Assembly: GCA_965285935.1 (NCBI GenBank)
Contig: OZ260661.1
Coordinates: 141,608,001 to 141,672,000 of the forward strand
DNA length: 64,000 nucleotides
Source: Ophelia neglecta
Taxonomy: Eukaryota
Reading direction: 5' to 3'
Within the stretch, counting starts at the first letter, position 1. Every line of letters begins with the position of its first letter. Both the position numbers and the translations under genes were made by a program. Positions 24,829 through 64,000 of this stretch are shown one piece after another. The notes beneath the pieces are model-generated. The model had not been told where the DNA came from. It ran no database searches and worked only from the letters and a program-made list of their open reading frames with translations.

Positions 24829-24985
24829 NNNNNNNNNNNNNNNNNNNNNNNNNNNNNNNNNNNNNNNNNNNNNNNNNNNNNNNNNNNNNNNNNNNNNNNN
24901 NNNNNNNNNNNNNNNNNNNNNNNNNNNNNNNNNNNNNNNNNNNNNNNNNNNNNNNNNNNNNNNNNNNNNNNNNNNNNNNNNNNNN
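24829..24985. other. Assembly gap (157 N)
   Basis: Run of N. Confidence 1.
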
Positions 24986-26905: not shown

Positions 26906-27246
26906 CGTGCTTTATTATGTTGTAAATCCGGAAATTTTGTTTAGCAGGAAATGTTCCTGCTTATAACAAAAACATTTCTACTGGCAAAAATGTCCCGTTT
27001 TCGTTTCCCTACTGAAACGCCAATAACAAACCACTCCTTATACATACTCAGAGACTAAACTAACTGTTGTAAAAGTTTGCTGAAATATGACTAGCAAACT
27101 GCTAGTCAAAACTTATTGGCTTACAGTGTCAAGTTCAGGGGTTTTATGGCTTACAGTGTCAATATTTGGGTTTTCTCAACTTATAGTGTCAATTTCCGGG
27201 TTTTTCTTGCCTAAGAGCGTCAAGTTCGGTGTTTTCCAAATAAGTT

Positions 27247-29403
27247 TTAGTTCATCAGTCGACTTCCGAAATAAATGATAAAATATACTAAAGGAGTTAC
27301 AATCCAGAGCATTGGAATCACATATATATTTATAATATACGCGTAATATGTGGGGATGGAGATCTCGAGCAATGACATTAAAGACACTACTGTTATTGGA
27401 GACGATAGAATCACATCGACAGTAGTCTGCCGTACAAAGTTCACGAGAGGATTGGTCGCCTTCTTCGACATTCTCCCGCCAAGAGCCTTAACTGAGGAGG
27501 ACGAAAGAGTCATTATTTTATATATCTTCCACTGCAGTATACAGCATATTAATAGTGATATAAAGTGTATTGCCAGATAGCAGATTAGCAATGCCCTGCC
27601 TTGCAGCTGAGGTGCTGTTGGAGGAAAGAAAAACGAACAGTGCTCATTCAGATCAGAAACGGCCTCTAAAGAAAAGCTCCAAACATGGGTGGCTGCCACG
27701 ATAGCCAATAATGACGTCCACGTGATACCAACGTACACTGTAGTATGACGATCTGCCTTCAGAATGGCTGATTTGAAGAGTTTATTGCGCTGGTACATTG
27801 ATAAGAAGCTTATCGCTTTTGAAACAAATACAGAGCACATGACCAAATACTGGATATAACTGGCTAATACGCATAGCACATGACGGGTACCATAAGGATA
27901 ATAAATAGCTTCAACATCAAATAGCAATTCTCGGAAAGTGATGATTTGAATATACATTCCCAACACAATACCAGATATATTGAGAGACAGAACAGTCCGT
28001 TGCCTACTAAATAGAGGTGCGTCACTTTTCAGTTTTATCACAATAGCATTCAATGCCATAAGACATACAGAAAATACCGTGGCAGCTATAAGCTGGCCAA
28101 CCGTAAGTTCGCCTTCGCATAAGGAGGTAACAAGACATTTACTATTGTCAAACCAACAACAGAAATAGCCCACCTCTGGATAAATGCTGACATTAAACAT
28201 ATATTTAGAATTATATGCTTTTTTTATTGGATTATCCGAGAGGATGATTTTCTCTAAATTTGGAAACGGGATAAAAAGAGAAAAGTCAAAAATGGTCATT
28301 TCATTAAATGAAAGATCAATCAGCTTTACAGACGGCAAATTATGAAACGAATTTCTTTTGAGCTGATGTAAATTCATAGATCGGAAATTAAGACTTGCCA
28401 ACCTTAAAAGATTATTAAGTGCCAAATGCTTTATTTCATTGATTCGATTGCCTTTTAAGATGATTGATCGCAGATTATTAAGACTGTCGAATGCTCCCGT
28501 TCCTACAACTTCAATACTATTGTCCGACAAATCTATGACAGCCACATTTGGAACAGAAGAAAATACATTTGCCGATACATCAACAAATGAATTAGATGAC
28601 AGATCAAGAGACACTACATGGTCACCAAGGATAAATTTTGGAATAATGCGCTGGTTTCCAGAGATACGGACGGCTTTCAACAAATAAACGTTTATTGAGC
28701 CATAAACAGTCGCATTAACACATAGCATAGACATCCATTGGCAATCACAATTTTGGTTACACGTGACATTACAGAAAAACTCATCCTCTCCATATAAAGG
28801 ACACTCGACTTTGCCATCACAAATACTACTCTGTGGCAAACAAAAACCTCCTTTGCATTGAAAAAACCCAGGGCAGTTCAGATGCTGGCCACTAGGTGGA
28901 CACTCGAGCTCATCTTCCCCTTTTAAACAATGGAACTCCCCGTCACAAACAAGAAACAGCGGCAGACAATATGATTGAGGACACTTAAACCGCCCTGGAC
29001 ACTGAAATTTTTGACATTGCTTTAAGTGGTCGCCGTGTCTACAATGCATAATTTTTCCATATGGACCCAACTCATAGACACAGAGTCTGTTCAGCGGAAA
29101 ACACCTAGATGGAGGGTTTGAACATGGTATATATTTGTCAGAACTACAGTTGATTAGTCCCAATGACCGTAAAGGATCCCAAACAAATGTCTCGTCTGAT
29201 ATTCCACTACCTGTACAATCGGGTACTTGGTCGTCAACCCAATCCATTGGTATGCATGTATTGGTAGAACGACACAAAAATGAACCAATGCATAGCGGAT
29301 GGCCTGCGATAATTGAGGCGGGTATTGGATACTGTTGAATCGGCTGTTGCCCATCCATATTAAGAATGGGTAATGGTTCTGTTAGGAGCGGCTGTACACA
29401 GAG

Positions 29404-29405
<2 letters not shown>
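27247..29405 (-). pseudogene. 5'-truncated duplicate of the GRL101-like receptor (LDLa-LRR-7TM part; 703-aa open frame)
   Basis: Matches the C-terminal 703 aa of 31746-35045 except for P/H and P/S substitutions. It is broken mid-exon against a (TA)n tract and has no signal peptide. It may be an assembly or haplotype duplicate. Confidence 0.7.
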
Positions 29406-29447
<42 letters not shown>

Positions 29448-31745
29448 TCATATATCTATATATATACTCAAAATATTTATACGCAAAATGCCGTACAGGT
29501 GCGATCTTTCCATGGGGTATATTAGAATACTAACTCGATGATGGATAGATATTCAAAAGTGCAATTTAATTCAAAACAGGGGAATATGTTTTCAATGTCA
29601 TATATTCTTGTTTTTATTAATTATAGAACTTATCTTTTTACAGACACTTACAAATGTGTTTATGTACGATACTTTCAGTACATGGTTTATTAGAAATTAA
29701 TAAATTATTCTCACAACAAAGATAATGTAGTTACAAGGTATCATTCAATCTAATATAGATGTAGTTTACTAGTCAAACACAACATAATTTATGGGGTCAA
29801 TCTTCATCGAGCCACCATTTTGAATTCTTCATCATATTAAGTCCGGTTGGGAATGTGCCTGGAAGGACAATACGTGACTGTACCAGACAACTTATTACAT
29901 AGCAGACAAACTGACTTCGTGCCATTCAAAATTAACTTGTAACCAACTAAGTAAAATGCTCCCAAACAAACTAACATTTTATCAGACCAACTAACCAAGC
30001 ATTGCAGCTGGCGTATATATAAACAACATATCAATCATTTCCAATCATTGCAGCTGGCGTATATATAGATTACATATCAACCATATCCAATCAATGCAGC
30101 TGGCGAATATATAGATTACATATCAACCATTTCCAAGCATTTCAGCTTGCGTATACTGAAAATTAAAATGATTTGTGAAAACAAATGTGAAACGTCTAAT
30201 ATAGTAAGCCAACAAGCACACGTCAGCATTATTTCATGCAGTGGCAAGACTCAGGGGGAGCAGTGATAATATGGATACTGTAAAAATCTCTTCACGTATA
30301 TTTTCAAGACATGTACCAGGTGAGGTCAAATGAAGATTTCAGAAATCAAGAAAATAACAACAACATCATCAAATAGCAGTACCTATGGCCGGACGAGGCA
30401 AACTACAGTATATATCTGACTGGTGCGTAGCCACATTGAAACGTCGCAAAAAACAAGCAGTCATAAGAAGTCTGTTTAATGCAGAGAGATTAGACCTATA
30501 AGTGCGTGTACTAAAAGAGTTGTTCACACTTGGAAGAGTCACCCATTTTCAAGTGTTTTTCTTTACGTTCTACGGTCTATGTGCGTACCTTTTTTGATGA
30601 AGTTTATGTCGCCATCTGGTTTCTCGTTCCTGATACCTGATGTAGCATCACCGGTCGTTCTCAGCACTTGGTTGTTATTTTCGTACTGCGCTTTTGAGTC
30701 CTTTCTTGTTCCATTCGTAGTTTTCAATGGTCACTTTGTTGACTAAATTTTCCATTTGTTTGTTGTTTATTAGAGTCATTTTCTGAATGTCTTCCATGTG
30801 TTTCTGTCAGCCAGGGTGATGATTCAGGAGACTTTTCTGGGGGCAGTAGCCTTGGCCGTAGACATCACTTCGGCCATATTTAGCACGAGATATATCTGTT
30901 CAATGTCATCTCCATGTAATCAAAGACATCTCCATGGTATTCTCGGTCACCTCCATGTGACCAAGGTCTTCTCCGCGCTATTCCCGGTCACCTCCATGTG
31001 GTCAAGGTCTTCTCCGCGCTATTCCCGGTCACCTCCATGTAATCAAGGTCTTCTCCGCGCTATTCTCGGTCACCTCCTTATGGTCAAGGTCTACTCCGCG
31101 CTATTCTCGGTCACCTCCATGTGGTCAAGGTCTTCTGAATGGTATTCTCGGTCACCTCCATGTGGTCAAGGTCTTCTGAATGGTATTCTCGGTCACCTCC
31201 ATGTGGTCAAGGTCTTCTGAATGGTATTCTCGGTCACCTCCATGTGGTCAAGGTCTTCTCCGCGCTATTCTCGGTCACCTCCATGTGGTCAAGGTCTTCT
31301 GAATGGTATTCTCGGTCACCTCCATATGGTCAAGGTCTTCTCCGCGCTATTCTCGGTCACCTCCATATGGTCAAGGTCTTCTCCGTGCTTTTCTTGGTCA
31401 CCTACGTGCTTTATTATGTTGTAAATCCGGAAATTTTGTTTAGCAGGAAATGTTCCTGCTTATAACAAAAAATTTTCTACTGGCAAAAATGTCCTGTTTT
31501 CGTTTCCCCACTGAAACGCCAATAACAAACCACTCCTTATACATACTCAGAGACTAAACTAACTGTTGTAAAAGTTTGCTGAAATATGACTAGCAAACTG
31601 CTAGTCAAAACTTATTGGCTTACAGTGTCAAGTTCAGGGGTTTTATGGCTTACAGTGTCAATATTTGGGTTTTCTTAACTTATAGTGTCAATTTCCGGGT
31701 TTTTCTTGCCTAAGAGCGTCAAGTTCGGTGTTTTCCAAATAAGTT

Positions 31746-34700
31746 TTAGTTCATCAGTCGACTTCCGAAATAAATGATAAAATATACTAAAGGAGTTACA
31801 ATCCAGAGCATTGGAATCACATATATATTTATAATATACGCGTAATATGTGGGGATGGAGATCTCGAGCAATGACATTAAAGACACTACTGTTATTGGAG
31901 ACGATAGAATCACATCGACAGTAGTCTGCCGTACAAAGTTCACGAGAGGATTGGTCGCCTTCTTCGACATTCTCCCGCCAAGAGCCTTAACTGAGGAGGA
32001 CGAAAGAGTCATTATTTTATATATCTTCCACTGCAGTATACAGCATATTAATAGTGATATAAAGTGTATTGCCAGATAGCAGATTAGCAATGCCCTGCCT
32101 TGCAGCTGAGGTGCTGTTGGAGGAAAGAAAAACGAACAGTGCTCATTCAGATCAGAAACGGCCTCTAAAGAAAAGCTCCAAACATGGGTGGCTGCCACGA
32201 TAGCTAATAATGACGTCCACGTGATACCAACGTACACTGTAGTATGACGATCTGCCTTCAGAATGGCTGATTTGAAGAGTTTATTGCGCTGGTACATTGA
32301 TAAGAAGCTTATCGCTTTTGAAACAAATACAGAGCACATGACCAAATACTGGATATAACTGGCTAATACGCATAGCACATGACGGGTACCATAAGAATAA
32401 TAAATAGCTTCAACATCAAATAGCAATTCTCGGAAAGTGATGATTTGAATATACATTCCCAACACAATACCAGATATATTGAGAGACAGAACAGTCCGTT
32501 GCCTACTAAATAGAGGTGCGTCACTTTTCAGTTTTATCACAATAGCATTCAATGCCATAAGACATACAGAAAATACCGTGGCAGCTATAAGCTGGCCAAC
32601 CGTAAGTTCGCCTTCGCATAAGGAGGTAACAAGACATTTACTATTGTCAAACCAACAACAGAAATAGCCCACCTCTGGATAAATGCTGACATTAAACATA
32701 TATTTAGAATTATATGCTTTTTTTATTGGATTATCCGAGAGGATGATTTTCTCTAAATTTGGAAACGGGATAAAAAGAGAAAAGTCAAAAATGGTCATTT
32801 CATTAAATGAAAGATCAATCAGCTTTACAGACGGCAAATTATGAAACGAATTTCTTTTGAGCTGATGTAAATTCATAGATCGGAAATTAAGACTTGCCAA
32901 CCTTAAAAGATTATTAAGTGCCAAATGCTTTATTTCATTGATTCGATTGCCTTTTAAGATGATTGATCGCAGATTATTAAGACTGTCGAATGCTCCCGTT
33001 CCTACAACTTCAATACTATTGTCCGACAAATCTATGACAGCCACATTTGGAACAGAAGAAAATACATTTGCCGATACATCAACAAACGAATTAGATGACA
33101 GATCAAGAGACACTACATGGTCACCAAGGATAAATTTTGGAATAATGCGCTGGTTTCCAGAGATACGGACGGCTTTCAACAAATAAACGTTTATTGAGCC
33201 ATAAACAGTCGCATTAACACATAGCATAGACATCCATTGGCAATCACAATTTTGGTTACACGTGACATTACAGAAAAACTCATCCTCTCCATATAAAGGA
33301 CACTCGACTTTGCCATCACAAATACTACTCTGTGGCAAACAAAAACCTCCTTTGCATTGAAAAAACCCAGGGCAGTTCAGATGCTGGCCACTAGGTGGAC
33401 ACTCGAGCTCATCTTCCCCTTTTAAACAATGGAACTCCCCGTCACAAACAAGAAACAGCGGCAGACAATATGATTGAGGACACTTAAACCGCCCTGGACA
33501 CTGAAATTTTTGACATTGCTTTAAGTGGTCGCCGTGTCTACAATGCATAATTTTTCCATATGGACCCAACTCATAGACACAGAGTCTGTTCAGCGGAAAA
33601 CACCTAGATGGAGGGTTTGAACATGGTATATATTTGTCAGAACTACAGTTGATTAGTCCCAATGACCGTAAAGGATCCCAAACAAATGTCTCGTCTGATA
33701 TTCCACTACCTGTACAATCGGGTACTTGGTCGTCAACCCAATCCATTGGTATGCATGTATTGGTAGAACGACACAAAAATGAACCAATGCATAGCGGATG
33801 GCCTGCGATAATTGAGGCGTGTATTGGATACTGTTGAATCGGCTGTTGCCCATCCATATTAAGAATGGGTAATGGTTCTGTTAGGAGCGGCTGTACACAG
33901 AGTTCCTCGTCCTCCTGGTCGCGGCAGTCTGGGCGAGTGTCACACACCTTGTACCAAGGCAGACATCGTCCAGACTGACACTGGTAGTAGTGAGGAGCAC
34001 AGGAACACCATGGCTGTGTGCAATTGTCTCTAAAAGCATTAGTCCCATAGGAACCATTTTGAAAACGATATATGGCCATGATCTCGTCTGACTCGTCATC
34101 ACAGTCGTTTTCACCATCCACCATGGCCCATTCAGATACACAAGATCCGTATTTACACTTGAACTGGAAGTTAAAACAGGGCACATTGTTGTTGACGAAG
34201 GGTTCCTTGCTATTGAGGCCCACACGGAGAGCATTTGAACATGTTGTATGTCCGTTTACTTTAATTGCCTGTGACGTTTTGTTGTCAATTATAACCCAGT
34301 CACAAATGCCCAAGTAGTCCATCCGTCGTAAAGACTCACTAATCCCTAAAACATATTTCTCCTTGGAATATTGTGGATTAAATTGTAAAGTGGGAGGTAG
34401 AGCTACGCCTGGAGTTGGCCTGAGACACTTATTATCGTGTGCTAGATAGTTATGTTGACACTCCATAAGAGGCTTAACCAAAGTGCCATTTACAACTCGG
34501 ACAGAAAGCACATCGAGATCGGTAGTGATGTTGTTGACGTTTGTTATATAGTTAAAGCAGATGGGTACCACGGCGTGGGACAAATGGCAGATACTACTAA
34601 GCAAGTGTTGAATGTTTTTGGTTAGCTTGGAGATAGTATGATGATCAAAATGCTTCGGAGCCTCTAAAGTATTTGAAGAGCAATTGTACGAGCCTTTATT

Positions 34701-37700
34701 GGTCCAGCCGAATTTCTGTACACCGTCGTCACAGCTGGGGTCGAGCAATGGGAACGCCATGAACAGAGCGTCAATGTATATCACTAGGTGACCATCATAC
34801 GAAGCTCTTTTGATTGGATAAAAAGAATCATTTGACCATGACTGACAAATCAACTGTTCAGCCCATATTCTGCCTTGGCATGATATCCTGTACCATACCA
34901 AGTTTTTTCTTGTACGTACACCCACTTTATCGACAGTATTAAGCAAACCACAAACATCATCGTCGGCTATGCGATTGCCATGATAAACAAAGCTTTCCGG
35001 TTCAATGCTGTTAATAATGGCCTTTTCTCCAGTCGACCAGTGCATCTGTAAATAAAAACAAAGAAAGTTAAAGAAAACAAAAGCTAGTTTTATCTTCGCG
35101 GTTCAATATACAACCTATTGATTGTTATTTGTCCTTATATTAGCTGAGTACTTTTGACCGCCCTAAAGTTAAAAAAACCGCAAAGTTTTCACGATTATCC
35201 AGTACTACAAATTCATCTAGAAAAGACTGCAAAAGAGGCAGCAGCAAGAAATATCAACGGCGTAGGCACTGAATACAAATACACACATACTAATACATTT
35301 CATACACGATAAGAAATATGGTAATTAAAAGACACATATTTTCATATTAATACGCAAGCATAGTAAAAGAATAACCTGTACACGTGCAATGGCATTGTGG
35401 CAATTTATAGGCACAGTGTAGATTATGATCAAGGTTTACATTGTGATCAAAGCAAAGGCAGCAGGGGCATAACACAAACCTAATAGGGACATAACACAAA
35501 CCTAATAGGGGCATAACATAAACCTAATAGGGGCATAACACAAACCTAATAGGGGCATAACACAAACCTAATAGGGGCATAACACAAACCTAATAGGGTA
35601 TAACATAAACCTAATAGGGGCATAACACAAACCTAATAGGGGCATAACACAAACCTAATAGGGTATAACATAAACCTAATAGGGGCATAACACAAACCTA
35701 ATAGGGGCATAACACAACCTAACAGGGGCATAACACAAACCTAATAGGGGCATAACACAAACCTAATAGGGGCATAACACAAACCTAAAAGGGGCATAAC
35801 ACAAACCTAATAGGGGCATAACATAAACCTAATTGGGGCAAAACACAAACCTAATAGGGGCATAACACAACCTAACAGGGGCATAACACAAACCTAATAG
35901 GGGCATAAGACAAACCTAATAGGGGCATACCACAAACCTAAAAGGGGCATAACACAACCTAACAGGGGCATAACACAAACCTAATAGGGGCATAACATAA
36001 ACCTAATAGGGGCAAAACACAAACCTAAAAGGGGCATAACACAAACCTAATAGGGGCATAACATAAACCTAATAGGGGCAAAACACAAACCTAATAGGGG
36101 CATAACACAACCTAACAGGGGCATAACACAAACCTAAAAGGGGCATAACACAAACCTAAAAGGGGCATAACACAAACCTAATAGGGGCATAACACAAACC
36201 TAATAGGGGCATAACACAAACCTAAAAGGGGCATAACACAAACCTAAAAGGGGCATAACACAACCTAACAGGGGCATAACACAAACCTAATAGGGGCATA
36301 ACACAAACCTAATAGGGGCATAACACAACCTAACAGGGGCATAACACAAACCTAATAGGGGCATAACACAAACCTAATAGGGGCATAACATAAACCTAAT
36401 AGGGGCATAACACAAACCTAATAGGGGCATAACACAACCTAACAGGGGCATAACACAAACCTAATAGGGGCATAACACAAACCTAAAAGGGGCATAACAC
36501 AAACCTAATAGGGGCATAACATAAACCTAATAGGGGCAAAACACAAATGTAATAGGGGCATAACACAAGCTAACAGGGGCATAACACAAACCTAATAGGG
36601 GCATAACACAAACCTAATAGAGGCATAACACAAACCTAAAAGGGGCATAACACAAACCTAAAAGGGGCATAACACAACCTAACAGGGGCATAACACAAAC
36701 CTAATAGGGGCATAACATTAACCTAATAGGGGCATAACACAAACCTAATAGGGGCATAACATAAACCTAATAGGGGCATAACACAAACCTAAAAGGGGCA
36801 TAACACAACCTAACAGGGGCATAACCCAAACCTAATCAGGGGCATAACACAAACCTAATAGGGGCATAACACAAACCTAATAGGGGCATAACACAAACCT
36901 AATAGGGGCATAACACAAACCTAATAGGGGCATAACATAAACCTAATAGGGGCATAACACAACCTAACAGGGGCATAACACAAACCTAATAGGGGCATAA
37001 CATAAACCTAATAGGGGCATAACACAAACCTAATAGGGGCAAAACACAAACCTAATAGGGGCATAACACAAACCTAATAGGGGCAAAACACAAACCTAAT
37101 AGGGGCATAACACAAACCTAATAGGGGCATAACACAAACCTAATAGGGGCATAACACAAACCTAATAGGGGCATAACACAAACTTAATCGGTGAAAATTT
37201 ATTTTACTCCATACACTCACTTCCCACAATTCCACGCGAAACAGAAGTATCCTTCATCAACTGGGTTTATTTTGATGACCGCAAGAAAAGCAGTTTATTA
37301 TGATGCATATCTTGGAATAGGTTGAATGAAAAGGTGTTAATGTAGTCAATATTTGTATTTGTGGGTCAAATTGATGTTTCAACCAAATTCTGACATAATC
37401 GCTAATCGTGTTTAGCTTGTACATTTAGTTTCGTTTTTTGAATTCCTTATTTTTCCATTAACCTGTCTTGTGTTGTACAAGTTGAGCATATTGTGCTCAT
37501 ATTTCTGCTGTAAATTGGACATGTGATTTTATTGATCGATTTAATAATGCTGTTTTACTCTCATGATATTAAATAGACCGACGCATTGGTATGAGTAATC
37601 AAATAAATTATTTCCACCCCCCCCCCCCCCCCTACCCCCCCTCGCATCTCGCATACTTTCAAACGGGCCGCCCAATGTGAGAGGTCATCCAACACCGCTA

Positions 37701-52292: not shown

Positions 52293-55200
52293 ATGCTTCG
52301 ACTCTACAACAGTCTTCAATGCAATTTGGGCGATATTAGAATTGCTATAGTGGATGGAGCCCCAGCCAGAGGTGAGACATTTCCCATGAGAAACTTGGTA
52401 TCTGATGGCGTCCCCTCCAGGGATGTGACGAATCCCACCGGAAGAGTAGTATCTGATGGAGTCACATCCAGGGATGTGACGAATCCCACCGGAAGAGTAG
52501 TATCTGATGGAGTCCCATCCAGGGATGTGACCAATCCCACCGGAAGAGTAGTATCTGATGGAGTCCCATCCAGGGATGTGACAAATCCCACCAGAAGAGT
52601 AGTATCTGATGGGGTCCCAGCCAAGGGTTTGACTTATCAAACGCGAACGACGGTATCTGATGGAGCCCAAGCCAATGGTTTGACAAATCCCAGGGAAGGC
52701 ATGGCGCCTGCTGGTAAGCAAAAAATAACTTGTGTACTTTAAGCAGTTGATTGAAGAACAATGCTGTCATGTACAACCTATATACAACATAAAACTAATT
52801 TGCTTTAAAGATATCAATTTTAACATTATGGATTGGAAAAGGGCCAAGGGCTTAAAAAGGCACACTCCAAGAAAATAAAAATAATTTGTCCTGCCAGTCA
52901 ACCAAAACAAAAACGTTTCCTTTTATAATGTTTGATAGGTTAACAAACTCAAAAGTCTTTGGTAACTGTTACCGCATTGTTGCGCAGTTGCTTGTCATAT
53001 ACCACTTTGCCTATTTGTACTATGCAGCTGATTCGGGATGATTTCTGATCGTTTAAATGGACTATGCTTGATTAGTGGTTATGCGGTGTTAAATTTATTT
53101 AAGCGTGGCTCATGTGCCATGCTGAGACACAGGGAAGGCACTGGGTGTAAAAAAACGACTTGATGATGTGTTTCGGTTTGCCTGCAAATATAACTTTAAA
53201 CGTCATGCACGTTTGTACCACACTTTCTTTCATTGTATCATGTCTTTAGAGATTAAGCTACAAGAAATTGAACTTTAATTTTAGTACAGTTATAGTAAGA
53301 GGTGTTACCACGTTAAGCTTATGGTTGACTATATTTGTATAAACAAATTGTACAGTACCTGCGTTGTTTTTGTTTATATGACAAGCAACAAAGTAAGGCT
53401 TCATTTGACACGTGTTATAAGTTAATGCTGAACACTTGACGGTCATACCATTTATGACATTCTACGGACACGTTTACAATTACCTCGAAAAACCTTAAAA
53501 TAAGAATATATTTTTTGATTTTCCAATTGCCCTATAAATTATGCTACTTAACCTAACCTAGAGGTACGCATATATGTTTGCATGCAAGTATGTTGTTTAA
53601 GTGTATATCTGATCATTTTATACTTATGTTTTAATAATTGACAGATCTGATCAGGATCTCACAGGGCTATGGTGTGGGTGATTCAAGGTGCAGTGGGCTA
53701 CACATGACACTGGGATCAATGGAACTTCAGCTGGAGCTTGGTGACATCACAAAGGAAACGACTGATGCTATAGTTAACAGCACAAACCCAACAATAGATC
53801 TCTCCATGGGTAAAGGGTCGTTAATCGATCATTGGCATATTACATTGGCTTCTGGTTACTATTTATATCCAGCACTTCCTTCTCGAATATACACCATTGG
53901 TTGAAGCCAGTGAGATAGTACAGACTCAAATTTGAGCATATTTCGATTCGGATAACTGTACCAAGAAATGTCTTTAAAGAATAATTTTGTTTTTTTATTT
54001 CTGTAACTGATAACAGTGTCACTATATTCCAATTGCATCAGCCAATCTAATTGGAATGACAATAAAGGTGAAAAAGGGCCAAACTATTTCCAATATTTTT
54101 GTTTTTCTGTGTTTTCTATAGGTGGTGTTGCAAACGCCTTAGTTAAAACAGGAGGTACCCAGTTTGTTAACGAATGCAAGAAAGCGGGTAAGAACTTGCC
54201 CCTCGTAAACTAAAGATATGTGTTAATTACTCGGCGTTAAGGTGAAAAAGAAGCTCACCATGGTACAGAATTTGATAAATATATCATTCCTCTATCAATA
54301 TGTTTCTCATTAAAGCGATGGTGGGCAATATTGCAGTCACGAGCGGCGGGAACCTTAGAGCCCAGGTCATCCACATTGCAGCTCCGTCGTGTGCAAATCA
54401 ATGGAAAACGGTGAACAATTTTATATCCAAATGCATATGTATAAAAATATATACGTAGGGAATACCCGGCAGACAAAGGGAGTCATTAATCGAGTATATT
54501 AGATAAGTAATTGATTTTTACTCTTACCAAAAAGTAAAAGTAACAATTCACGTGTGTGCAGTCAATGCGCAGAAGTGAGATATTTCTTAGTATTCTTAGT
54601 ATTCAAAGAACTGTAGTGTTAATAAATATTGGATGTTCAAACTTCAGGGACAAAAAGAACAAACGTAACATGAAGAAGGTTACTTTAATTGCAAAGAAAT
54701 TACTGATTAATTTTTATGAATAATAACTTGAGGGTAATATTTAATAATTTGCATTTATTTAGGTGCTCAAGCAATCATTAAAAGAGGCAGAGCGCTTGGG
54801 GTTTAGGTCTGTCACATTCCCTGCTTTGGGTACAGGTATGTTTGTACAAGCTCTGGCGCTCTTATATAACATGATGTGGGTGTTGCCAGTCCTTATAGTC
54901 TTGTTAGTATACTTTACACCTAGAAACTGATGATAGACTACTATATTTGAAAATGTATTGTTTACAGGGGCGGATCCAAGAATTTCCAAGGGGGGGGGGA
55001 GCATGTGGAGGAATTGAAAAGCGGGGGTGTGTGTGGGGGGTGGTCACCGAAGTTACATACATACGTCTAGTTGCCTATGTTTTGGGCGCCTGTTGGGGGT
55101 GTAGATGGGCTTGTTCAGAGTAAAAAAATGAGGTGGGGGGGGGGGGCAGGATCCGCCCTTGGTTTATTACGATGAGTTCCAACACAATGTGTACCAAAAC

Positions 55201-58200
55201 AATAAAACGAAATGAAATGCTTTCAGGTCAACTCCATGTATCGGGGTCCATAATGGCGAGTATCATGTTGGACTCATTTGCCGACTTCGCCAACAGCAAA
55301 CCTTCCAGCCTGCACCTGATAAGAATTGTTATCTATCCGGGGCAGCCCCACATTTTGGAGCAGTTTAGAATGGAGATCATAAGGAAGGCCGCATATGTCA
55401 AGACAAAATCCGTCTGGAGCTCTTTCAAGGATGCCATGGGTAAATATAAATAGACAATCCAAATACTCATCTAAGAAATAAGCCTAAATTAGCAAATCAA
55501 TCATGGTGTAGTTTATTTATACAATGGAAGTTGATTTCGTTCCGTCAAATATAGCATATAACATTATGTTATAGCCGAGTGATTATGTATAACTAATCCT
55601 CAGCCAGATGGCGCGTGTACTCTCCCCCGCTCAGAAATTTAACTTCAAAAAAGTGTTTGCTTTACTTGACCTTAAGGTTTGTCAGGTGAATCTAAGTGGG
55701 AGATTGATGAAGGGGTACTGGACCTTGTTAATATCATAAGCGAAGTACAAAAAGAAATCAAGGTAAGGTTTATACTGTTTGGTTACACAACTGGTAGAAA
55801 ATTAGATTGCTAATTATCATCCTAAATAATGCTACTTTTTGGTGAATGTAGGCACAAGTAAGTACAGAAATAATAGATCTCATTCATTTGATATTGCTAG
55901 CATTGCAATACGGTCAGGGACAATTTAGTGGCCAACGGAGCTGGGTCTGGGACATCGGAGGTACAAGAAAGTTTAGACTTCTACGAGGATACAATTAAAG
56001 GCTTAACGCAAGAGCTTGACGAAATGACAGGTAGGAGCATTGAGCTTTGGCAAACTGCAAACAATGTATTATGCCAGATTTACATTCAGGTAGAGCATCC
56101 AGCTATTAACCACCGACTTGCTCCACATTGTGGCATATTTTGTTGTTTTGAAGCCGTGTTCAAACAGACTGAGGATGAGCGGAAAAAGATAGAATCTGAA
56201 GCAAAGATCCACGAAGAGATGGTCGCTAAACGTCGACGAACAAGGGCCAAAATAATAGAGGAGATGATACGGACAGAACGAGATTACCTACAAAGTCTCC
56301 AGCTCTGTTGTGACGTCTTCTTGGGAGCAGACGCTGAAAAGGTATATTTTTCTACCGACCTTTTACATCCTTCTTTTTACAATCTTGGATATCCGGCAGA
56401 CAGAACAAAGCCATATACAGTGAAACCTGCCTTTAAGACCACCTCTATATGCAGACCACCTGTCAATTCAGACCACTAATATGTGGACCATGATGTATTC
56501 TTTCAATGTTAAATAACCTGTCTAAACAGACAACCTCAGAAATCAGACCAGTATTTTCCAGTCCCATGGGTAGTCTTTATTCACAGGTTTCACTGTAACA
56601 ATAATATACTACTAAATCGGCCCGAAATAAATAGGCACTGTCGAGCCGAGGCGCACACATATCGACCTAGCTTCCTTTACTTAATAGAAATGTATTTATG
56701 AAGCAGGCATTTATATGTATTACTGTTAGTTGCCATGCGATACATGATTCAGAGTTATAAATGCGAAATGTTAAACAGTAGCATTGGCATCATTTTGTCT
56801 CCTGCTGGTTAAATATGTTCTAAAAAATACATATACAAATGTGTGTTCATAAACTTATGTATATGTATATGTATAGTCTGTTTTAATGGATCAACCATAT
56901 AAATGCTTTTCCATTTCATTGCCAGTGTGATTTGGTGGACCTGGACACACTATTTGGTAACATGGATGAGGTTGTAGAGGTGTCTAAGGCCCTCGTTTAT
57001 TCTTTGGAGTACTGCGCCGAGAATAACGTCTTTGAGGAACAAATTATAGGTAAACGACATACATTTTTTTACATTTCATTATGTATGGATTTTACCATGA
57101 GGTGGAAGGAAGCCTTTGATAGCACATGTCGTTCAAAGCTAGCACACAAATTCATCTAAAACGTCGAAAAGGGACTTAGAGATCACATTTTTTCATTTCA
57201 CATACGAGCTTGCTCTTCAACACTACAAGAAGCTTCCAGCTCTAGGCCATGTAATTGTTTGTCTTGCTTTCATACAATTATAACAACTGGTCGAAGCCTT
57301 TGCCCTTGCAAGAGTCGTAATCAGTTTCTTCTTTATTTGCCCTCACTTGAAGGAAAGTAGTTTACCGGGCAAATCACTTAAACTCACAATTTGGTGGCTA
57401 TGAAATAATGAAGCAACGTTTATAAATAGCGGTACCAGTCCCCATTTCTGACTTTTTTTGTTGCCATTTTTATTTATTGTATTTTTACTTATTTTTAACT
57501 TTCAATTGATATTGGAAATATTTTGGAAATCCATATATTTATATTACTGTCATTTCACGAAAAGATCAATATACAAGGCACAAGCTTCTTGAGAAGCTGG
57601 TTGAGTCTGGAGTGGCATCAAATAGCTGTTCATAGAATGGAGACGCCTTCCAGAAAGAATCAGAGAATGGTCACTTCTTCATGAATGCAATGGACAGATA
57701 AAAATTAATTGAATAATAACTACATTGGCGCTCCTTTATACGTGAGGAAAGGGGGGGAAATAAAAATGTGCTGTACATAAAACCTCAATTGTATGGAGTA
57801 AAGGCGGATTATAAAGATCCATAGTTCATAGAACAAGCAAAGTCAGAGAAGTAGGCAAACTGCTCAGCTTCATCTCCACCTCGCCAAATCGGTTACCTAG
57901 AAATCTTGGTTATCATAAATAGAACGACTGTAACTTATTTGGTCCCGGGATGACTCTCGTGATGACTCACGAATAAGTGAACAATTCCGAAAATAATCAT
58001 CCGGGGTCTACATGTTTGATGTCAATGGCAACAAAATGGTTGGGGCTAGGCAACAGCACGTTGTCGAGACGTTATTGTAAGCTAAATGAGCCTGGCAGTC
58101 CAAAGAGAACATGCGGCACATTAGCTCATTCAGTTGCTAAGAGAAATACGAGTCAAATGAGTCCTGTTTAGTTTTCACATCTGTTGATTGGGTATGTTCT

Positions 58201-61200
58201 GAAAGCAATAACACATTCAGAACAGGACACATTAAGGTGACTGCGCATTAATGATTACAATCATAATATTATTAATAGTATCATTATTTCATTATCCTCA
58301 GGATGTCAAGTACAAAGGCGCCTCACAATAAATTACGAACAAACAGTTATAGATAGAAATAAATAATAAATCATAACAGGAGTCAGCTTTCCTAGAAATG
58401 GATTTAAAAGCGTTATACCTATCGGTGCGATACATCGCTTATGTATTATGTATATTGTACGATATATTCACAGGAACTAGCTTTGTTGCCCTCCAAGAAG
58501 AAATGACCACAGTATATGGTCCATACTGCAGGAATCATGAGCAGGCCACATCGCTTTTAGTAACAGTAAGTCCCGTTTACAACCTCATCAGGTCTGACAT
58601 AAGGTAAATGTGAACCTAGTATTGCATACCTGCCACCGTTCAAAAGGATTTTTCTTTTATAATGTGAGTTAAGAAAAAGCTATTTACTTTTACAATAAAC
58701 TATGTCTTTTGTCGATAAACAAATGTGTTATTTGGTGTGATTGGATTTGAAAACAACGTGCAAATCCTTTTTTATCTAATAATAAGCTTTAGATATTGTA
58801 TTTTTGTAAGCAAATCAATTCAAAATGAATCTTCAGAGAAATTCAATTTACATGGTGTAATTAAATATTTTTAAATCGACATTGAGAAGATAAATATGAA
58901 ATCAGACCAAAAACCACGGTGCACATTTTATATTTAATCTAATGTATCCTCCTGATCAATGTAAAAAAAAAAGAGATTTATAGTTCGATCCGAAAAAACC
59001 TTTCTAGTCTTATCATACAATCCTATTTCAGTATAAGAGTGAGACGGTCACTAGAGAATGGCTGTCCCGTATGTTAGTCAGGTTAGGGGAAATCGCTAAA
59101 CCCTGTCACCTGGAAGACTACCTAATAAAACCGGTCCAAAGGTTTCTCAAATATCCTCTACTGCTTAATGAACTCATCAAAGTAAGTAGAATGCCCTCCT
59201 AAAATTGATCCTGGTCACCGTATAACACTCATCCAAGAGGCAAAGTTCATTCAAATATTTAAATTGATCATATGTTGAAGATCATCCAAATATTTGGACA
59301 TCCTGTTACAATGTATGTGATACTTTTATTGCAAATTTGTAACACACTCGGTCATGGTGTAAACAAAGGCTACTGGCATGATCAAGTTCGCATTTAGGAA
59401 ATTCCTTATAATCCATTCATTATATTAACATTGTGTTTAAAGATATCCAATCTTTTAAGGTTAATTGTTTTGTTAACTTAATTAGTTTTTGATTATTTGA
59501 TGTATTGACGGTGGTCCCCATGATTTGGGCCAATTAAAATGGGTTTTTGTCTGGCGGCGGTCCACGCCCGTTTTTTTACAATATCATTTGCCCTGTACAC
59601 ATTTGTGGCTATTAAACCTGTCTTATTCACATAACCCAAACCATGCTTCTGTCTTGATTCTGACAACTGGCTCTAACTGTAGAACACTGAAGATTACCAC
59701 GAAGACATGCCTCATCTTTCAGCAGCTAACAATGTAATGACTGACATGGCAAATGCCATCAACGAATTCAAGAGAGGAAAAGAACTAGGCAAGTTAAGAA
59801 ATTTGCATTCCAGGAACCTGATATAAAATCCATTATTCATGCATTCAAACAAGTAATAAATATACAATCAGATGTAGTATTACTTGTGTTTGAACAATAC
59901 ATGTATAACGGTTCTGTGATATTTCCAGTTCAGAAATACACTAAGGAGACTGATGGCACGCGCAATAGAAAAAGGGGCAAGTTCACCCTCCATTCAACCA
60001 AGAAGAAGATTTTTCGATTTACCCAGACAATGATCGGCAATAAGGTAAAAAAAACATGTTGCATAATCAGTGCACGAAGAAAACATGACTGAAATTTCCC
60101 TTTTTAAAGCACTGGTATTTGGCTGAAAGAATAATAAAAAGTAAACCAAGTGCAATATAAAAACCTCTATATTTGCGAAAAGCCATTGCTTGATTAAAAA
60201 ATAATTAAAAACTATTGGTAAAATAATTGTAAAAAAATAAATAAATGTAACCTAATCCATTTATCTGCATTTGTTGGCAGACTGTTGATAGAAACTTTGA
60301 CCGGGAGGAAAAGAAGTTTAAAACGCTTGCTCTGGTTGTGACAAACCTTGTTCGGGACATATCTCAGAACCTGGAAGACATGCAGATTTCCATGGAGACC
60401 CAGGAGAAAGTAGCCTATGACATCTCCTGTTTGTTTGACACTTGTACCACTTCGCAGGTTAAAAAGTTCAGCAAGGTGCACATTAAGGTGGCTGAAAATT
60501 TGTTCCACGAATTTGTAAGTTGTAGTTTTAATTAGTATCAAAAATCAGAATTTAGAAAAGGAAAAATATAATAAGAAGGTTCAAGGCAGTTGGTTTTTGA
60601 CTTCTAAACAGTATACGTCTTTTTTCTTTGGAATATGTCGGTTAAATTCGTTATTTTAGAAAGCCAGGATCGAATGTGAGGTACTTCGTCCATTGAACCG
60701 CTTGACCGTCATGCTCCAGGGGCCGCCCAAGGTTATCAGGAAGCGCAACGACAAGTTGCTTGACTACGACAACGCCTCAATCGGATTCAAGCGGTCAAAA
60801 GAAGGTGATGGAAAAGAGAAAACGGTATGATTTTTATGACTCAATGTTATTTGTAAATGTGCGGCCTCAGCAGGATTCCTGTTTACCTTACATTTGGTAC
60901 AAACCTGGTATTTATACCAAATGGAACCCCAAATTGTATTGTACCTTAACTTGTACCTGAGTTCCTTGCCACTTTTCGTCTGTTTTCGTCTGTTTGACTA
61001 GAGAAAACACTTTATAGTTTTTTGTGAACTATATGTCATTTCATAAATATGTAAATTTCATATGAATTGTATGTTTCTATACAGTTTACTGGACAGCTAT
61101 TACATAAGTTTATACTACTTCATTTCTAGTTATTAAATTATAGGTTTTTTTACCCTTCACCTGGGGTGGCTCACACGATAGCGATATTATATATCTTCAG

Positions 61201-63515
61201 TGTAAGTCTCCTCGGCCGCTACTGCATATACAAATGTATCAGTCTCATTTTCTATATCATTTGAAATTATAGTATTTAACTTAATCTAAATTATAGTATT
61301 TAGTTTGCTTGTATTATCTATACGATGTGGTCAAAATAACTACTGTCTGTCTATTTTAATAAAACATGTGACAAGCTTATATCAGTATTCTTTATCAGTA
61401 CTGTCACGAAATCACGATTCTGTGCCAGATTTTCATTCAATGTTTTACCGATTATAGGCCAATGCTGACCTGCAGAAAGCAAGAAAGAACTATGAGGCCA
61501 TGAATGCCCAGCTCCTGGAAGAACTTCCCAGACTGGTGGGGTTATCATTGGACCTTGTTCGGCTTTGTTTAAAACAATGGGTAGAAATGCAGAACGAGTT
61601 TCATAACCAAGCGCAAGAAGAAATGCGCAAATTGCAACATGTACGTTTGCCTCAAACGTATTTATACGGTATATTTTTGTGTTGGTTAATGAGTTGAATT
61701 TGTCTGCCACACCTTTAAAGCAAGGATCGATATATTTTGGTATCACATCGCATGGTTATCACATGGTTAATTCATATAATTGCGTTGACTTTACCTCTTG
61801 TATGATTTATGTTAGTTTTTACATGTACATAGTAGTATATTATCCAGGATGAGAGTGGCCACAGGTCACATGACCACAGGTCACAGTCTGCCAGTCAGAA
61901 GGCGTACTTCCGCCAGAAGTACGTCAGTGATCAACTCTTCTCGGATTACTCATCTAACTCCGGAGGAGACATGAAGGACCTTGTTCTGCCTCCAGGGCCT
62001 AACTCTGGACGACAGATAACGGACCCGGTTCTACCCCAGAGACCTAATGCCGAAGGACAGATGGGGGACTTGGTTATGTCTCAGGGCCCTAATTCCGGAG
62101 GGGAGATGAAGGACCTGGTTCCACCTCAGGGCCCTAACTCTGAACGACAGATCACGGACCTGGTTCCAGCTCAGGGTCCTTTCTTTGATGTCATTAAGGG
62201 TGAGGATGGAGGTAAGTGCCATGTATAAAATCCAATTGAGAAATCCGAGAGAATTCTCCTGTGACAAATAAGCTAACTATGCATTCTTGTATGTTTCCTT
62301 TGGAATGATGGTCAATGTATATAAATCTTAATAAGAACTCGTAATTTGTAAAAAGATTAAGGAATACTGATTGAATGACAAGATTCGTTATGGATTATGT
62401 CTTTTCAGTTACCGATGGAGTTTTCCCTAAGAGGTCACCCATTGTTTCCATTCCGGCTACCCCCTCAAGTATATCGCCTGGCGGAGGCATCAACCCCTCA
62501 TCTCATCCAACGGGTGAACCGTCACATCTGGATGCCTTCTCCAAGAGTCTTGTAGATAACACCACTCAAAGGGGAGAAATGACGTTTGCGGCGAGACAAC
62601 CTTTAAGTTCCACTTATCCTTCATCGGCCCTTACCAGTGGTGACGGTGAAAAAGTGAAGGTACCTGTTTTATGCACATACTCAGAAATTCAATATATCTT
62701 ACCAGTTTTGTTCAAGTGTATCCATGAACTTTCAACTTACTGCTGGGAGATGGGGATTGATGCTTGTTGGCCTGTAGCTGGTGGTTCCCGCTGATATCGG
62801 ACTGGTTTAATGAATTATTCCCGGTTAAATGATTTAGCTTCGTCTGCGTTTAATCCACTCCCGTTTGTCAAGGCCGCAATCGATACAAGCACGTGGTTAC
62901 TAAGCATCAATCACTGCTCCCTCTTTTATGGCTATACCTGGGACAGCTGAGAACAAAAGGGCTCTGGAAATTACCCTTTCGGGGGGGGGGGGTAGTTATT
63001 TGACTTGCTTAACTGGAAAGTGACCTTCCGGCGTCTAAAGATATATAGTACGTTTATAATCATACATGTTAAACTTTTCAGTCTTTGTTTGTTTGATAAA
63101 GAAAAACCCGGCTTAAACACATTGAAGTGAACTACTTTAACATATTAAATAAAACACTCAAAATAACTGAAGCCAATGGTCTCACCAACACGTTTAATAA
63201 AAGGATTGGACAGTACCAAAAACTAAAGAGGATTCTCTTTATTGATTAAAGATGGATGTTCCCCGGATCACGGAATCATTTGGCTCAGACTTACATGACT
63301 CTGGCTGGTCTGAAGATGAGTCTGCACCCCTACCACATGACAGTACGAAAAGAGTCCACTCGGGCACACCAGCTTCTAGGCAGGCGTGGAATATCCCCCT
63401 GACATGTGTAGAGAAAGGGACAGAGGAAGGAAAAGAGGAAGGGACAGAAGACAGAGGTCAAGGATTCCGATTGAATACACACATACTTTTTAAATGCCAC
63501 CATTTTTGTTACTAA
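52293..63515 (+). CDS. Macrodomain-DH(RhoGEF)-BAR protein, Tuba/DNMBP/ARHGEF37-38-derived (~1158 aa, 20 exons)
   Basis: Phase-consistent, stop-free exons: 52293-52713, 53645-53809, 54122-54187, 54316-54410, 54763-54835, 55227-55439, 55686-55762, 55901-56030, 56154-56341, 56926-57049, 58474-58565, 59032-59181, 59683-59788, 59929-60044, 60281-60514, 60660-60824, 61458-61640, 61848-62211, 62409-62659, 63252-63515. Macro motifs GDIT, IVNSTN, GGVANAL, VIH and FPALGTG. DH motifs EMIRTERDY, LFGNM, LIKPVQRFLKYPLLL and INE. DNMBP-type BAR motifs KRNDKLLDYD and YEAMNAQLLEELP. The terminal exon is the least certain. Confidence 0.85.
52380..52700 (+). repeat. Coding 51-bp repeat (17 aa, VVSDGVPSRDVTNPTGR) x ~6
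   Basis: Direct observation in the first coding exon of the Macro-DH-BAR gene. Confidence 0.9.
54965..55161. mobile_element. hAT5-like MITE (intronic)
   Basis: TIRs CAGGGGCGGATCC / GGATCCGCCCTTG, with a perfect 5-bp TSD GTTTA. Confidence 0.85.
56418..56595. mobile_element. Tc1/mariner (pogo/Tigger-like) MITE (intronic)
   Basis: TIRs CAGTGAAACCTG / CAGGTTTCACTG with a TA TSD. Confidence 0.88.
61955..62180 (+). repeat. Coding 45-bp repeat (15 aa, MxDLVxPQGPNSxxQ) x ~5
   Basis: Direct observation in exon 61848-62211. Confidence 0.85.
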
Positions 63516-63683: not shown

Positions 63684-63850
63684 ATATACCAAGCTGCATA
63701 CACCTCCCTCTTTGCATACACCTGTAGAAATTAGCCTGGTGGAAGGCCAAACGGCACGATTTGTTCAACTTCATGATTTGGAAGGCAATCAAGACTGGTG
63801 ACAGGTTTAATATGATGGGCGGCAGGGCTATGCTCCAGTTTCAAGACTAC
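63684..63850 (+). pseudogene. Decayed C-terminal SH3 exon of the DNMBP-derived gene
   Basis: After the acceptor TTTTACAG the sequence reads IYQAAYT, then in the +1 frame PVEISLVEGQTARFVQLHDLEGNQDW*QV*YDGRQGYAP. This is an SH3 consensus with one frameshift, a TGA at 63799 and a TAA at 63808. Confidence 0.8.
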
Positions 63851-64000
63851 AACTACAAGGCCCAATAGTCCATATGTCCATATACATTGTTGATGTGTGT
63901 ATAGAAGTTTGGACAAGGTTTTTACCTCATGAATGTCGCTGGGAGAACTTCGAAAAACTGTTAAAAGTTAAACATATCCTTCATAGTAGCTGTGATATAC

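What the first reader, a model, noticed from the sequence alone, without database searches (positions are those of the whole stretch)
52293..63515. Macrodomain fused to a Tuba/DNMBP-type DH-BAR module: a possible ADP-ribose-sensing Rho GEF
Seen: five macrodomain exons (53645-55439) continue in matching splice phase through two linker exons (55686-55762, 55901-56030) into the DH domain, with no stop codon and only short introns (246, 138 and 123 bp) between. The ADP-ribose pocket motifs (GDIT, NSTN, GGVA, FPALGTG) look intact. Established: DH followed directly by BAR defines the DNMBP/Tuba-ARHGEF37/38 family; Tuba has four N-terminal and two C-terminal SH3 domains and activates Cdc42, and this macro type occurs in PARP9/14/15. 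Inference: exon shuffling replaced SH3-based targeting with a macrodomain, which could couple ADP-ribosylation to membrane curvature and Rho signalling. I know of no described Macro-DH-BAR protein.
Basis: partly seen in the sequence, partly recalled or inferred. Interest (0 to 1): 0.86.

Follow-up and report, generated by a model that had tools for sequence, protein, structure and literature searches.

The report
Macrodomain fused to Tuba-type RhoGEF
In this invertebrate (probably annelid) genome, a copy of the dynamin-binding-protein (Tuba) Rho-activator gene has swapped its SH3 targeting domains for an ADP-ribose-binding macrodomain taken from a PARP14-like gene. The same fusion recurs in at least four other genes on the chromosome, so the link between the two parts looks real and selected, though no transcript data exist yet.

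Summary
On the + strand, 52293-63515 can be read as 20 exons and 1,158 codons. All 19 acceptors are AG, 18 donors are GT and one is a conserved GC, every splice phase matches, and there is no internal stop. Exon-level searches find Macro (e2-e6), RhoGEF/DH (e9-e13) and BAR (e15-e17).

- A canonical SH3-DH-BAR-SH3 DNMBP gene lies on another chromosome. It shares exon boundaries with the window gene from linker exon e7 onward.
- The macro block is a phase 1-1 exon set, also found in a macro-PARP cluster 3 Mb upstream.
- A decayed C-terminal SH3 exon (63684-63868: 2 stops, at least 2 frameshifts) sits behind the gene.
- About 0.7 Mb upstream lie a second Macro-DH-BAR-SH3 gene and three apparent (Macro-DH)n-SH3 genes, in which only about 190-nt in-frame introns separate a DH from the next macro.
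- dN/dS is 0.15-0.3 for all modules, and allelic differences in the DH/BAR exons are 5 synonymous to 1 conservative.
- None of the best 120 DNMBP homologues in the protein database carries a Macro domain, and no paper was found.

Limits: there are no RNA runs for this organism, the first and last exons are unsupported, and the function (an ADP-ribose-guided or ADP-ribosyl-Rho-sensing GEF) is inferred.

The parts
52293..52713 (+). Putative first coding exon e1. It has an ATG and in-frame 51-nt tandem repeats (x4.4-5.8), and leaves in phase 1.
   Evidence: Open frame and GTAAGC donor; TRF period 51. No homologue at any paralogue. Its status as an exon is unsupported.
53645..55439 (+). Macrodomain module of five exons: e2 53645-53809, e3 54122-54187, e4 54316-54410, e5 54763-54835, e6 55227-55439. 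It enters and leaves in phase 1.
   Evidence: Collinear Pfam Macro hits. PARP14/15/9 macro hits in the PDB. It is 60-66% identical to seven further macro modules at C1:140.86-140.98 Mb. dN/dS is about 0.2.
55686..56030 (+). Linker exons e7 (55686-55762, phase 1 to 0) and e8 (55901-56030, phase 0 to 1). They are inherited from the DNMBP parent, not from the macro donor.
   Evidence: e7- and e8-like exons with the same phases lie upstream of the DH in the canonical C9 gene, in copy A and in the arrays.
56154..59788 (+). DH (RhoGEF) domain: e9 56154-56341, e10 56926-57049, e11 58474-58565, e12 59032-59181, e13 59683-59788. e13 ends at a GC donor.
   Evidence: Pfam RhoGEF hits in e9, e11 and e12. 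PDB DH-domain hits. The IIEEMIRTERDYLQSL and LIKPVQRFLKYPLLLNELIK motifs match the DNMBP consensus. The GC donor is conserved in the paralogues.
59929..61640 (+). DH-BAR connector e14 (59929-60044) and BAR domain: e15 60281-60514, e16 60660-60824, e17 61458-61640.
   Evidence: Pfam BAR hits in e16 (28 bits) and e17 (41.6 bits). Identity to the canonical C9 DNMBP BAR exons is 62%. Only three e15 homologues exist in the genome.
61848..62659 (+). Low-complexity tail exons e18 (61848-62211, 45-nt repeats x5) and e19 (62409-62659).
   Evidence: Open frames with matching phases. The start of e18 is homologous to the C9 gene and copy A; e19 has no homologue. TRF.
63252..63515 (+). Uncertain.
   Evidence: AG acceptor, phase 0, open to the stop. 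No homology support. The alternative is splicing of e19 to the relic acceptor at 63684, which gives 16 codons and a TAG at 63732-63734 (and direct reading of the sequence).
63684..63868 (+). Relic of the ancestral C-terminal SH3 exon. It has in-frame stops (TGA 63799-63801, TAA 63808-63810) and at least two frameshifts, and still ends in the ancestral YKAQ* stop.
   Evidence: Alignment by eye to the terminal SH3 exons of the C9 gene, copy A and the arrays. Not found by the SH3_9 scan. Contigs of three DNA runs agree with the assembly here apart from one SNP at 63672, upstream of the relic.

Best explanation
This is a real, intact, lineage-specific gene that encodes an N-terminal PARP14/15-type macrodomain, a short coiled linker, a Tuba/DNMBP-type DH (Rho-family GEF) domain and a BAR domain.

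Origin (shown by comparison within the genome). A duplicate of the canonical DNMBP gene lost its N-terminal SH3 exons. In the phase-1 intron just upstream of linker exon e7 it acquired a five-exon, phase 1-1 macro module from the macro-PARP gene cluster 3 Mb away on the same chromosome. Its C-terminal SH3 exon later decayed.

Function (inferred). The macrodomain replaces SH3-mediated targeting, so the GEF is recruited to, or gated by, mono-ADP-ribosylated partners. In the sister genes the unit that was repeatedly duplicated is Macro+DH, without BAR. The two domains therefore probably act on the same partner, and the most obvious candidate is a Rho-family GTPase.
For: - Gene model: 20 exons, 1,158 codons, all acceptors AG, donors GT plus one conserved GC, phases chain, no stop.
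- Domains: confirmed exon by exon.
- Parent gene: the canonical paralogue C9:41.457-41.477 Mb is SH3 x4-5, then e7, e8, DH, BAR, SH3, with identical boundaries. Its large SH3 exon ends ...TTC G|gtaagc and its e7 starts cag|GT GAG, the same split Gly codon as the window's e6|e7.
- Macro donor: the macro module has the same phase-1 end in a macro-PARP cluster copy, and PARP exons follow the macro-only copies.
- Recurrence: copy A (C1:140856569-140869598) is Macro-e7-e8-DH-BAR-SH3 with the same splice sites. Three minus-strand arrays carry 7 more intact macro and 8 more DH modules with 0 stops. Gaps of only 181-212 nt separate e13 from the next e2-like match, and the phases are compatible (1 to 1), which leaves no room for a terminator plus promoter.
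- Selection: window versus paralogues gives dN/dS of about 0.15-0.3 at dS of about 1 for macro, DH and BAR. Alleles in DH/BAR exons e11-e15 are 5 synonymous and 1 V>I. The disabling lesions are confined to the SH3 relic, with none in the other roughly 1,150 codons.
- Catalytic motifs: the DH signature motifs match the DNMBP consensus.
Against: - There is no transcript evidence. The only runs holding the stretch look like DNA from one sample, and no protein from this species is in the searched libraries.
- The first and last exons have no homology support.
- Each macro exon is below Pfam's cut-off on its own.
- An in-frame ATG at the end of e8 could start a DH-BAR-only product from an internal promoter.
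- Copy A may have a frameshift or a weak acceptor at the 5' end of its e9.
- The polymorphism argument rests on 6 sites from one sample.
- Ligand binding and GEF activity are untested.
Confidence: 0.72

Rival explanations
1. These are two adjacent genes, or alternative transcripts. A macro-only gene (e1-e6) ends at the read-through stop after e6, and an N-terminally truncated DNMBP paralogue starts at e7 or e8. The matching phases are then only a legacy of shared exon structure.
For: Read-through of the e6 donor reaches TAG after 4 codons. e8 ends with an in-frame ATG just before the DH. No RNA data exclude this.
Against: - The e6-e7 gap is only 246 nt, with no AATAAA or ATTAAA seen on the + strand (the listing was cut short at 55512).
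- e7 has no ATG yet is conserved as a coding exon downstream of macro or DH modules in the paralogues.
- The same Macro-then-DH order recurs in 7 or more diverged units. These include internal units where about 190 nt separate a DH from the next macro, in frame.
Confidence: 0.15
2. The gene is decaying or unexpressed. It is a dead duplicate of a Macro-DH-BAR-SH3 gene, and the SH3 exon shows the first lesions.
For: The SH3 relic has 2 stops and at least 2 frameshifts. The macro-fused copies evolve faster than the canonical gene (45-52% versus 51-62% identity to outgroup DH domains). No expression data exist.
Against: - There are about 4 lesions in about 62 relic codons, against 0 in about 1,150 other codons.
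- dS of about 1 to every paralogue with dN/dS of 0.15-0.3 means long survival under constraint.
- Segregating differences in the DH/BAR exons are 5 synonymous to 1 conservative.
- All 19 splice-site pairs are intact.
Confidence: 0.08
3. The macrodomain is catalytic. It would be a mono-ADP-ribosyl hydrolase, as reported for some macro-PARP macro 1 domains, rather than a reader, and the protein would erase ADP-ribose at sites where the DH docks.
For: The NSTN and GGV motifs and the FPALGTG loop are kept in all 9 modules. MacroD-type hydrolases also appear among the e2 PDB hits, at E of about 0.01.
Against: The best PDB matches for e2 and e6 are PARP14 (4abk/7d2c), PARP15 (3v2b) and PARP9 macro chains. 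From memory these are binding modules (4abk is PARP14 macro 3 with ADP-ribose). This cannot be decided from sequence alone.
Confidence: 0.2

Closest known systems
DNMBP / Tuba, with its short relatives ARHGEF37 and ARHGEF38 (DH followed directly by BAR)
   Same: The DH is followed by a BAR domain instead of a PH domain. Exon boundaries and phases from e7 to e18 are shared with the genome's own canonical DNMBP gene. Identity to that gene is 68% (DH) and 62% (BAR), and 52% (DH) and 46% (BAR) to Capitella DNMBP. The signature motifs are conserved.
   Different: There are no N-terminal SH3 domains (from memory, these are the dynamin-binding part), and the C-terminal SH3 is reduced to a relic with stops. 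A macrodomain sits in their place. The gene evolves faster than the canonical copy.
Macro-PARPs (PARP9, PARP14, PARP15)
   Same: The macrodomain is of the same subtype: the best PDB hits are 4abk/7d2c, 3v2b and 5ail. Its closest genomic relatives are macro modules that sit upstream of PARP catalytic exons on the same chromosome, with the same five-exon, phase 1-1 structure.
   Different: The gene has no PARP catalytic domain, WWE domain or RRM. It carries a single macro module joined to a RhoGEF.
The sister genes in this genome at C1:140.86-140.98 Mb (Macro-DH-BAR-SH3 and (Macro-DH)n-SH3)
   Same: They have the same Macro-then-DH order, the same splice sites and the same GC donor after e13. 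Identity is 53-59% (DH) and 60-66% (macro).
   Different: They keep an intact C-terminal SH3. The three minus-strand genes lack BAR exons and repeat the Macro-DH unit two to three times. The window gene has the most DNMBP-like DH (PYCRNH is kept).

Membership tests
DNMBP/Tuba-ARHGEF37/38 (DH-BAR RhoGEFs) | DH domain followed directly by a BAR domain (no PH) | tested here: met
   RhoGEF hits in e9, e11 and e12, and BAR hits in e16 and e17, with only e14 and e15 between them. The exons are homologous to the genome's canonical DNMBP gene and to named DNMBP proteins.
DNMBP/Tuba-ARHGEF37/38 (DH-BAR RhoGEFs) | N-terminal SH3 domains (full-length Tuba type) | tested here: not met
   The genome-wide SH3_9 scan finds SH3 exons in the C9 gene but none in the window. 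No coding-like ORFs lie at 46.8-52.3 kb.
DNMBP/Tuba-ARHGEF37/38 (DH-BAR RhoGEFs) | C-terminal SH3 domain | tested here: not met
   Only a relic is present at 63684-63868, with 2 stops and at least 2 frameshifts.
DNMBP/Tuba-ARHGEF37/38 (DH-BAR RhoGEFs) | Cdc42-directed exchange activity | not testable with these tools
   Only the conservation of the DH CR1 and CR3 motifs was seen.
Macro domain (PF01661), macro-PARP subtype | Sequence match to the Macro profile over the whole domain | tested here: inconclusive
Exons e3, e4 and e5 match collinear profile positions at 14, 16.1 and 17.1 bits, each under the 22-bit cut-off. e2 and the e6 profile match the PARP14/15/9 macro chains at their N- and C-terminal ends.
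Macro domain (PF01661), macro-PARP subtype | ADP-ribose pocket motifs (Asp before I-T, N-x-x-N, GGV loop, P-A-L-G-T-G loop) | tested here: met
   GDIT, NSTN, G|GVA and FPALGT|G are present in the window gene. They are conserved in the seven paralogous modules, with ADIT in six of them and ANIT/NSTD in copy A.
Macro domain (PF01661), macro-PARP subtype | Binding or hydrolysis of ADP-ribose | not testable with these tools
   This needs a binding or enzyme assay. No fold was made because the exons were not joined.
Macro-PARP (PARP9/14/15) | C-terminal PARP catalytic domain | tested here: not met
   The PF00644 scan of the genome gives no hit in the window. The gene continues into DH-BAR instead.

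The most novel reading that the evidence does not exclude
The Macro+DH pair is a functional unit that recognises, and perhaps repairs, ADP-ribosylated Rho-family GTPases. The DH docks the GTPase and the macrodomain reads or removes an ADP-ribose placed on it, for example by bacterial ADP-ribosylating toxins or by the neighbouring macro-PARP/DTX-type immune genes. The gene family would then be an invertebrate innate-immune guard of Rho GTPases, and the tandem (Macro-DH)n genes would be avidity or multi-specificity versions.
Probability: 0.15. Interest if true: 0.9.

Novelty: new variant of a known kind. Interest (0 to 1): 0.66.

Why it matters
ADP-ribosylation and Rho-GTPase signalling are already known to meet in one setting: many bacterial toxins ADP-ribosylate Rho proteins. 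No host protein is known that joins an ADP-ribose reader to a Rho GEF.

Here such a fusion arose by clean exon shuffling and was kept under purifying selection. It was also amplified as a Macro+DH unit next to a macro-PARP cluster. This gives a concrete, clonable candidate for a direct link between the two systems, and a clear example of phase-1 module exchange.

If only the architecture holds, and not the proposed function, it is still a new domain combination for both families.

Tried and rejected
- RNA evidence: the look-up of sequencing runs found only three DNA-like runs from one sample, so no junction test was possible.
- Library search: a search of 1.84 billion representative proteins with macro exon e6 gave 9 weak hits. 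The top one is a spurious bacterial SPOR-repeat protein. The best real hits are a Glandiceps PARP15-like protein and exon-sized fragments. There was no Macro-DH protein and nothing from this species.
- Best fragment: the contig of hit P0002 carries tandem macro exons but no DH exon in the 3 kb downstream, so it is uninformative.
- PDB with single exons: e6 alone found nothing and needed a profile. The BAR exon gave only amphiphysin, at E 0.029.
- Papers: four searches found nothing relevant.
- Poly(A) signals: the listing was cut short at 55512, before the end of the e6-e7 intron, so that point rests on reading the sequence.
- First exon: e1 homologues were sought genome-wide, and only weak repeat-like matches were found.
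No whole-domain Pfam score, AlphaFold model or fold search exists for this gene. Distances and dN/dS were summed over exon-wise alignments.
- Rejected explanation: an assembly chimera. Contigs of the runs cover the region, and diverged paralogues show the same order.


Full report
**Scope and rules.** All searches were made exon by exon, by reference. Scripts translated each exon in its own frame and checked phases arithmetically. The N run at 24829-24985 was left alone.

**1. The observation.**
- The region was read directly and each candidate exon was translated in three frames.
- The final model has 20 exons, 3,477 nt and 1,158 codons plus a stop. All 19 acceptors are AG. There are 18 GT donors and one GC donor (GCAAGT after e13). 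Every outgoing phase equals the next incoming phase, and there are no internal stops.
- By exon, Pfam finds Macro at collinear profile positions in e3, e4 and e5. Each score is below the cut-off: 14, 16.1 and 17.1 bits against 22.
- Pfam finds RhoGEF in e9, e11 and e12 (35 bits for e12) and BAR in e16 and e17 (28 and 41.6 bits).
- e2 matches human PARP14 macro chains 4abk/7d2c at E 2.4e-5. A profile of e6 homologues matches the C-terminal ends of PARP15 (3v2b), PARP9 and PARP14 macro chains. e12 matches many solved DH domains.

**2. What the genome adds.** The window is G000:C1:141608001-141672000.

- *Co-occurrence of the two parts.* Searching the genome with DH exon e12 and macro exon e6 showed that the two co-occur 4-5 kb apart, on the same strand, at C1:140.86-140.98 Mb. 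I fetched 130 kb there and 40 kb at C9:41.45-41.49 Mb and mapped all window exon peptides onto them. I also scanned the genome for SH3_9 and PARP.
- *(a) The canonical DNMBP gene.* C9 carries the canonical gene. It has a first SH3 exon with a start Met, a 774-codon exon with further SH3 domains, then e7-like, e8-like, DH, e14, BAR and tail exons and a C-terminal SH3. No macro exons lie within 18 kb upstream.
  - It is the slow-evolving copy, with 62% DH identity to Capitella DNMBP.
  - The closest named relatives of its SH3 exon are annelid proteins (Capitella, Owenia). The organism is therefore probably an annelid, or at least a lophotrochozoan.
- *(b) The junction.* The junction is exact. 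The C9 SH3 exon ends ...TTC G|gtaagc (phase 1) and its e7 begins cag|GT GAG. The window's e6 ends ...ATG G|gtaaat and its e7 begins cag|GT GAA.
  - e7 and e8 therefore belong to the DNMBP parent.
  - The macro block e2-e6, which enters and leaves in phase 1, took the place of the SH3 exons in that phase-1 intron.
- *(c) The macro donor.* The macro-only copies at C1:138.3-138.9 Mb are followed 5-6 kb downstream by PARP catalytic exons. One of them ends e6 at the same phase-1 donor. The donor family is thus a macro-PARP cluster on the same chromosome. Earlier first-stage notes on that region (macro-RING-DTC, PARP14-like variants) describe the same cluster. I treated them as leads only.
- *(d) The lost SH3.* Behind the window gene, 63684-63868 is a clear relic of the terminal SH3 exon.
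  - It aligns to the intact terminal SH3 exons of C9, copy A and the arrays, down to the ancestral YKAQ* stop.
  - It carries TGA in place of the second Trp, TAA in place of a Glu, and at least two frameshifts.
  - Contigs of three DNA runs agree with the assembly there.
- *(e) Copy A.* Copy A (C1:140856569-140869598, + strand) is Macro-e7-e8-DH-e14-BAR-tail-SH3, with the same splice sites and the same GC donor. Its e9 5' end may carry a frameshift or use a weak acceptor.
- *(f) The minus-strand arrays.* Three runs on the minus strand read as follows:
  - Macro-DH-e7/e8-DH-SH3
  - Macro-DH-Macro-DH-Macro-e8-DH-SH3
  - Macro-(10 kb)-DH-Macro-DH-e14-SH3
  
  They have no BAR exons. No exon match contains a stop, and AG/GT sit at the predicted homologous boundary in most exons. 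Internal e13 exons end at the GC donor, and 181-212 nt later the next e2-like match begins, at an AG acceptor in phase 1. The Macro-DH block is therefore itself a 1-1 module that was duplicated within genes.
- *Copy count.* Only three e15 (BAR) homologues exist in the genome: the window gene, the C9 gene and copy A.

**3. Is the window gene alive?**
- Against each paralogue, summed exon-wise Nei-Gojobori counts give dS of 0.8-1.4. dN/dS is about 0.15-0.3 for macro, DH and BAR, and 0.26-0.46 for linker e8.
- At that divergence a dead gene would be full of stops. Here the lesions are confined to the SH3 relic.
- In contigs from the sequenced sample, differences within DH/BAR exons e11-e15 are 5 synonymous and one Val>Ile. 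The tail exon e18 has two non-synonymous differences. The numbers are small, but they apply to this copy itself.
- The DH keeps the DNMBP signature: IIEEMIRTERDYLQSL, PYCRNH and LIKPVQRFLKYPLLLNELIK. The BAR keeps FQGP..VI.KR.DKLLDYDN and NYEAMNAQLLEELP.
- What is missing is any transcript. No RNA run exists for the organism, and no protein of this species or a close relative is in the 1.84-billion-protein library.
- e1 has in-frame 51-nt repeats but no paralogous counterpart. Splicing e19 to the relic's acceptor is equally possible, and would add 16 codons and a TAG at 63732-63734.

**4. How it most likely works.**
- Shown: the architecture, its origin by exon shuffling, its recurrence, and constraint on all three modules.
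- Inferred: the macrodomain binds mono-ADP-ribose, since the pocket motifs are kept in all nine modules (with ADIT or ANIT for GDIT in the paralogues) and the subtype is that of macro-PARP domains. It would thereby target or gate the GEF in place of the SH3 interactions. From memory, Tuba's N-terminal SH3s bind dynamin, its C-terminal SH3 binds actin regulators, and its DH acts on Cdc42.
- Evolution amplified Macro+DH without BAR. The coupling is therefore more likely between the macro and the DH's GTPase partner than between the macro and membrane curvature.
- The boldest reading is a sensor or eraser of ADP-ribosylated Rho GTPases, set in an immune-type gene neighbourhood. It is stated as the novel case at low probability.

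**5. Comparison and novelty.**
- The DH-BAR part is homologous to DNMBP, but the gene fails the SH3 features of full-length Tuba. In that respect it resembles the short ARHGEF37/38 forms.
- The macro part belongs to the macro-PARP subtype, but the gene has no PARP domain.
- Among the best 120 of 1,477 database homologues of the Capitella DH-BAR region (annelids, molluscs, brachiopod, nemerteans, arthropods, cnidarians, chordates), all are SH3/RhoGEF/BAR and none lists PF01661. Only the top 120 could be inspected.
- Four literature searches found nothing.
- I rate it a new variant of a known kind: a new domain combination that looks lineage-restricted among the annotated genomes searched and is expanded here.

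**6. Verdict.**
- Confidence that this is one intact Macro-DH-BAR gene: about 0.72.
- Interest: 0.66.

Noticed in passing
G000:C1:140892018-140977894 (loci L020-L029), minus strand: Three apparent genes are built of repeated Macro-DH units ending in an SH3 exon and lacking BAR exons. About 190-nt in-frame GC-AG introns separate each DH from the next macro. All exon matches are intact, and AG/GT sit at most homologous boundaries.
   Followed up: partly
G000:C1:140856569-140869598 (L017-L018), plus strand: A second Macro-DH-BAR gene still has an intact C-terminal SH3. The 5' end of its first DH exon shows a possible 1-nt frameshift near an A6 run, or else use of a weak downstream acceptor.
   Followed up: partly
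G000:C1:138.27-139.11 Mb: This is a cluster of macro modules, each followed 5-6 kb downstream by PARP catalytic exons. It is the likely donor of the macro block. First-stage notes s1-734160, s1-734184 and s1-734197 describe odd macro/PARP/DTX architectures in the same stretch.
   Followed up: partly
window 59789-59928: A GC-AG intron (donor GCAAGT) follows DH exon e13. It is conserved in copy A and in the internal units of the arrays, while the terminal units of the arrays use GT at that site.
   Followed up: yes
window 26299-35045, minus strand: Two near-identical intronless ORFs (703 and 1,099 aa) encode LDLa-repeat, leucine-rich-repeat and 7TM proteins, which look like LGR/relaxin-receptor relatives. 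Identical 140-aa ORFs lie beside them, so this is a tandem duplication of about 4.5 kb. The shorter copy lies downstream of the N gap at 24829-24985.
   Followed up: no
window 6522-9971, minus strand: A 1,149-aa ORF of a non-LTR retrotransposon, with endonuclease-like and reverse-transcriptase-like sequence.
   Followed up: no
window 60800-61400: The intron between BAR exons e16 and e17 holds a high-copy repeat. Summed contig depth is 300-1,000 there, against about 20 elsewhere.
   Followed up: no
window 52398-52692 and 61954-62180: In-frame tandem repeats (51-nt units in e1, 45-nt units in e18) encode 17-aa and 15-aa peptide repeats at the two ends of the protein.
   Followed up: partly
window 56031-56153: The 123-nt intron between e8 and e9 is a multiple of three and has no stop, so retaining it would keep the frame (ORF 55928-56479).
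   Followed up: no
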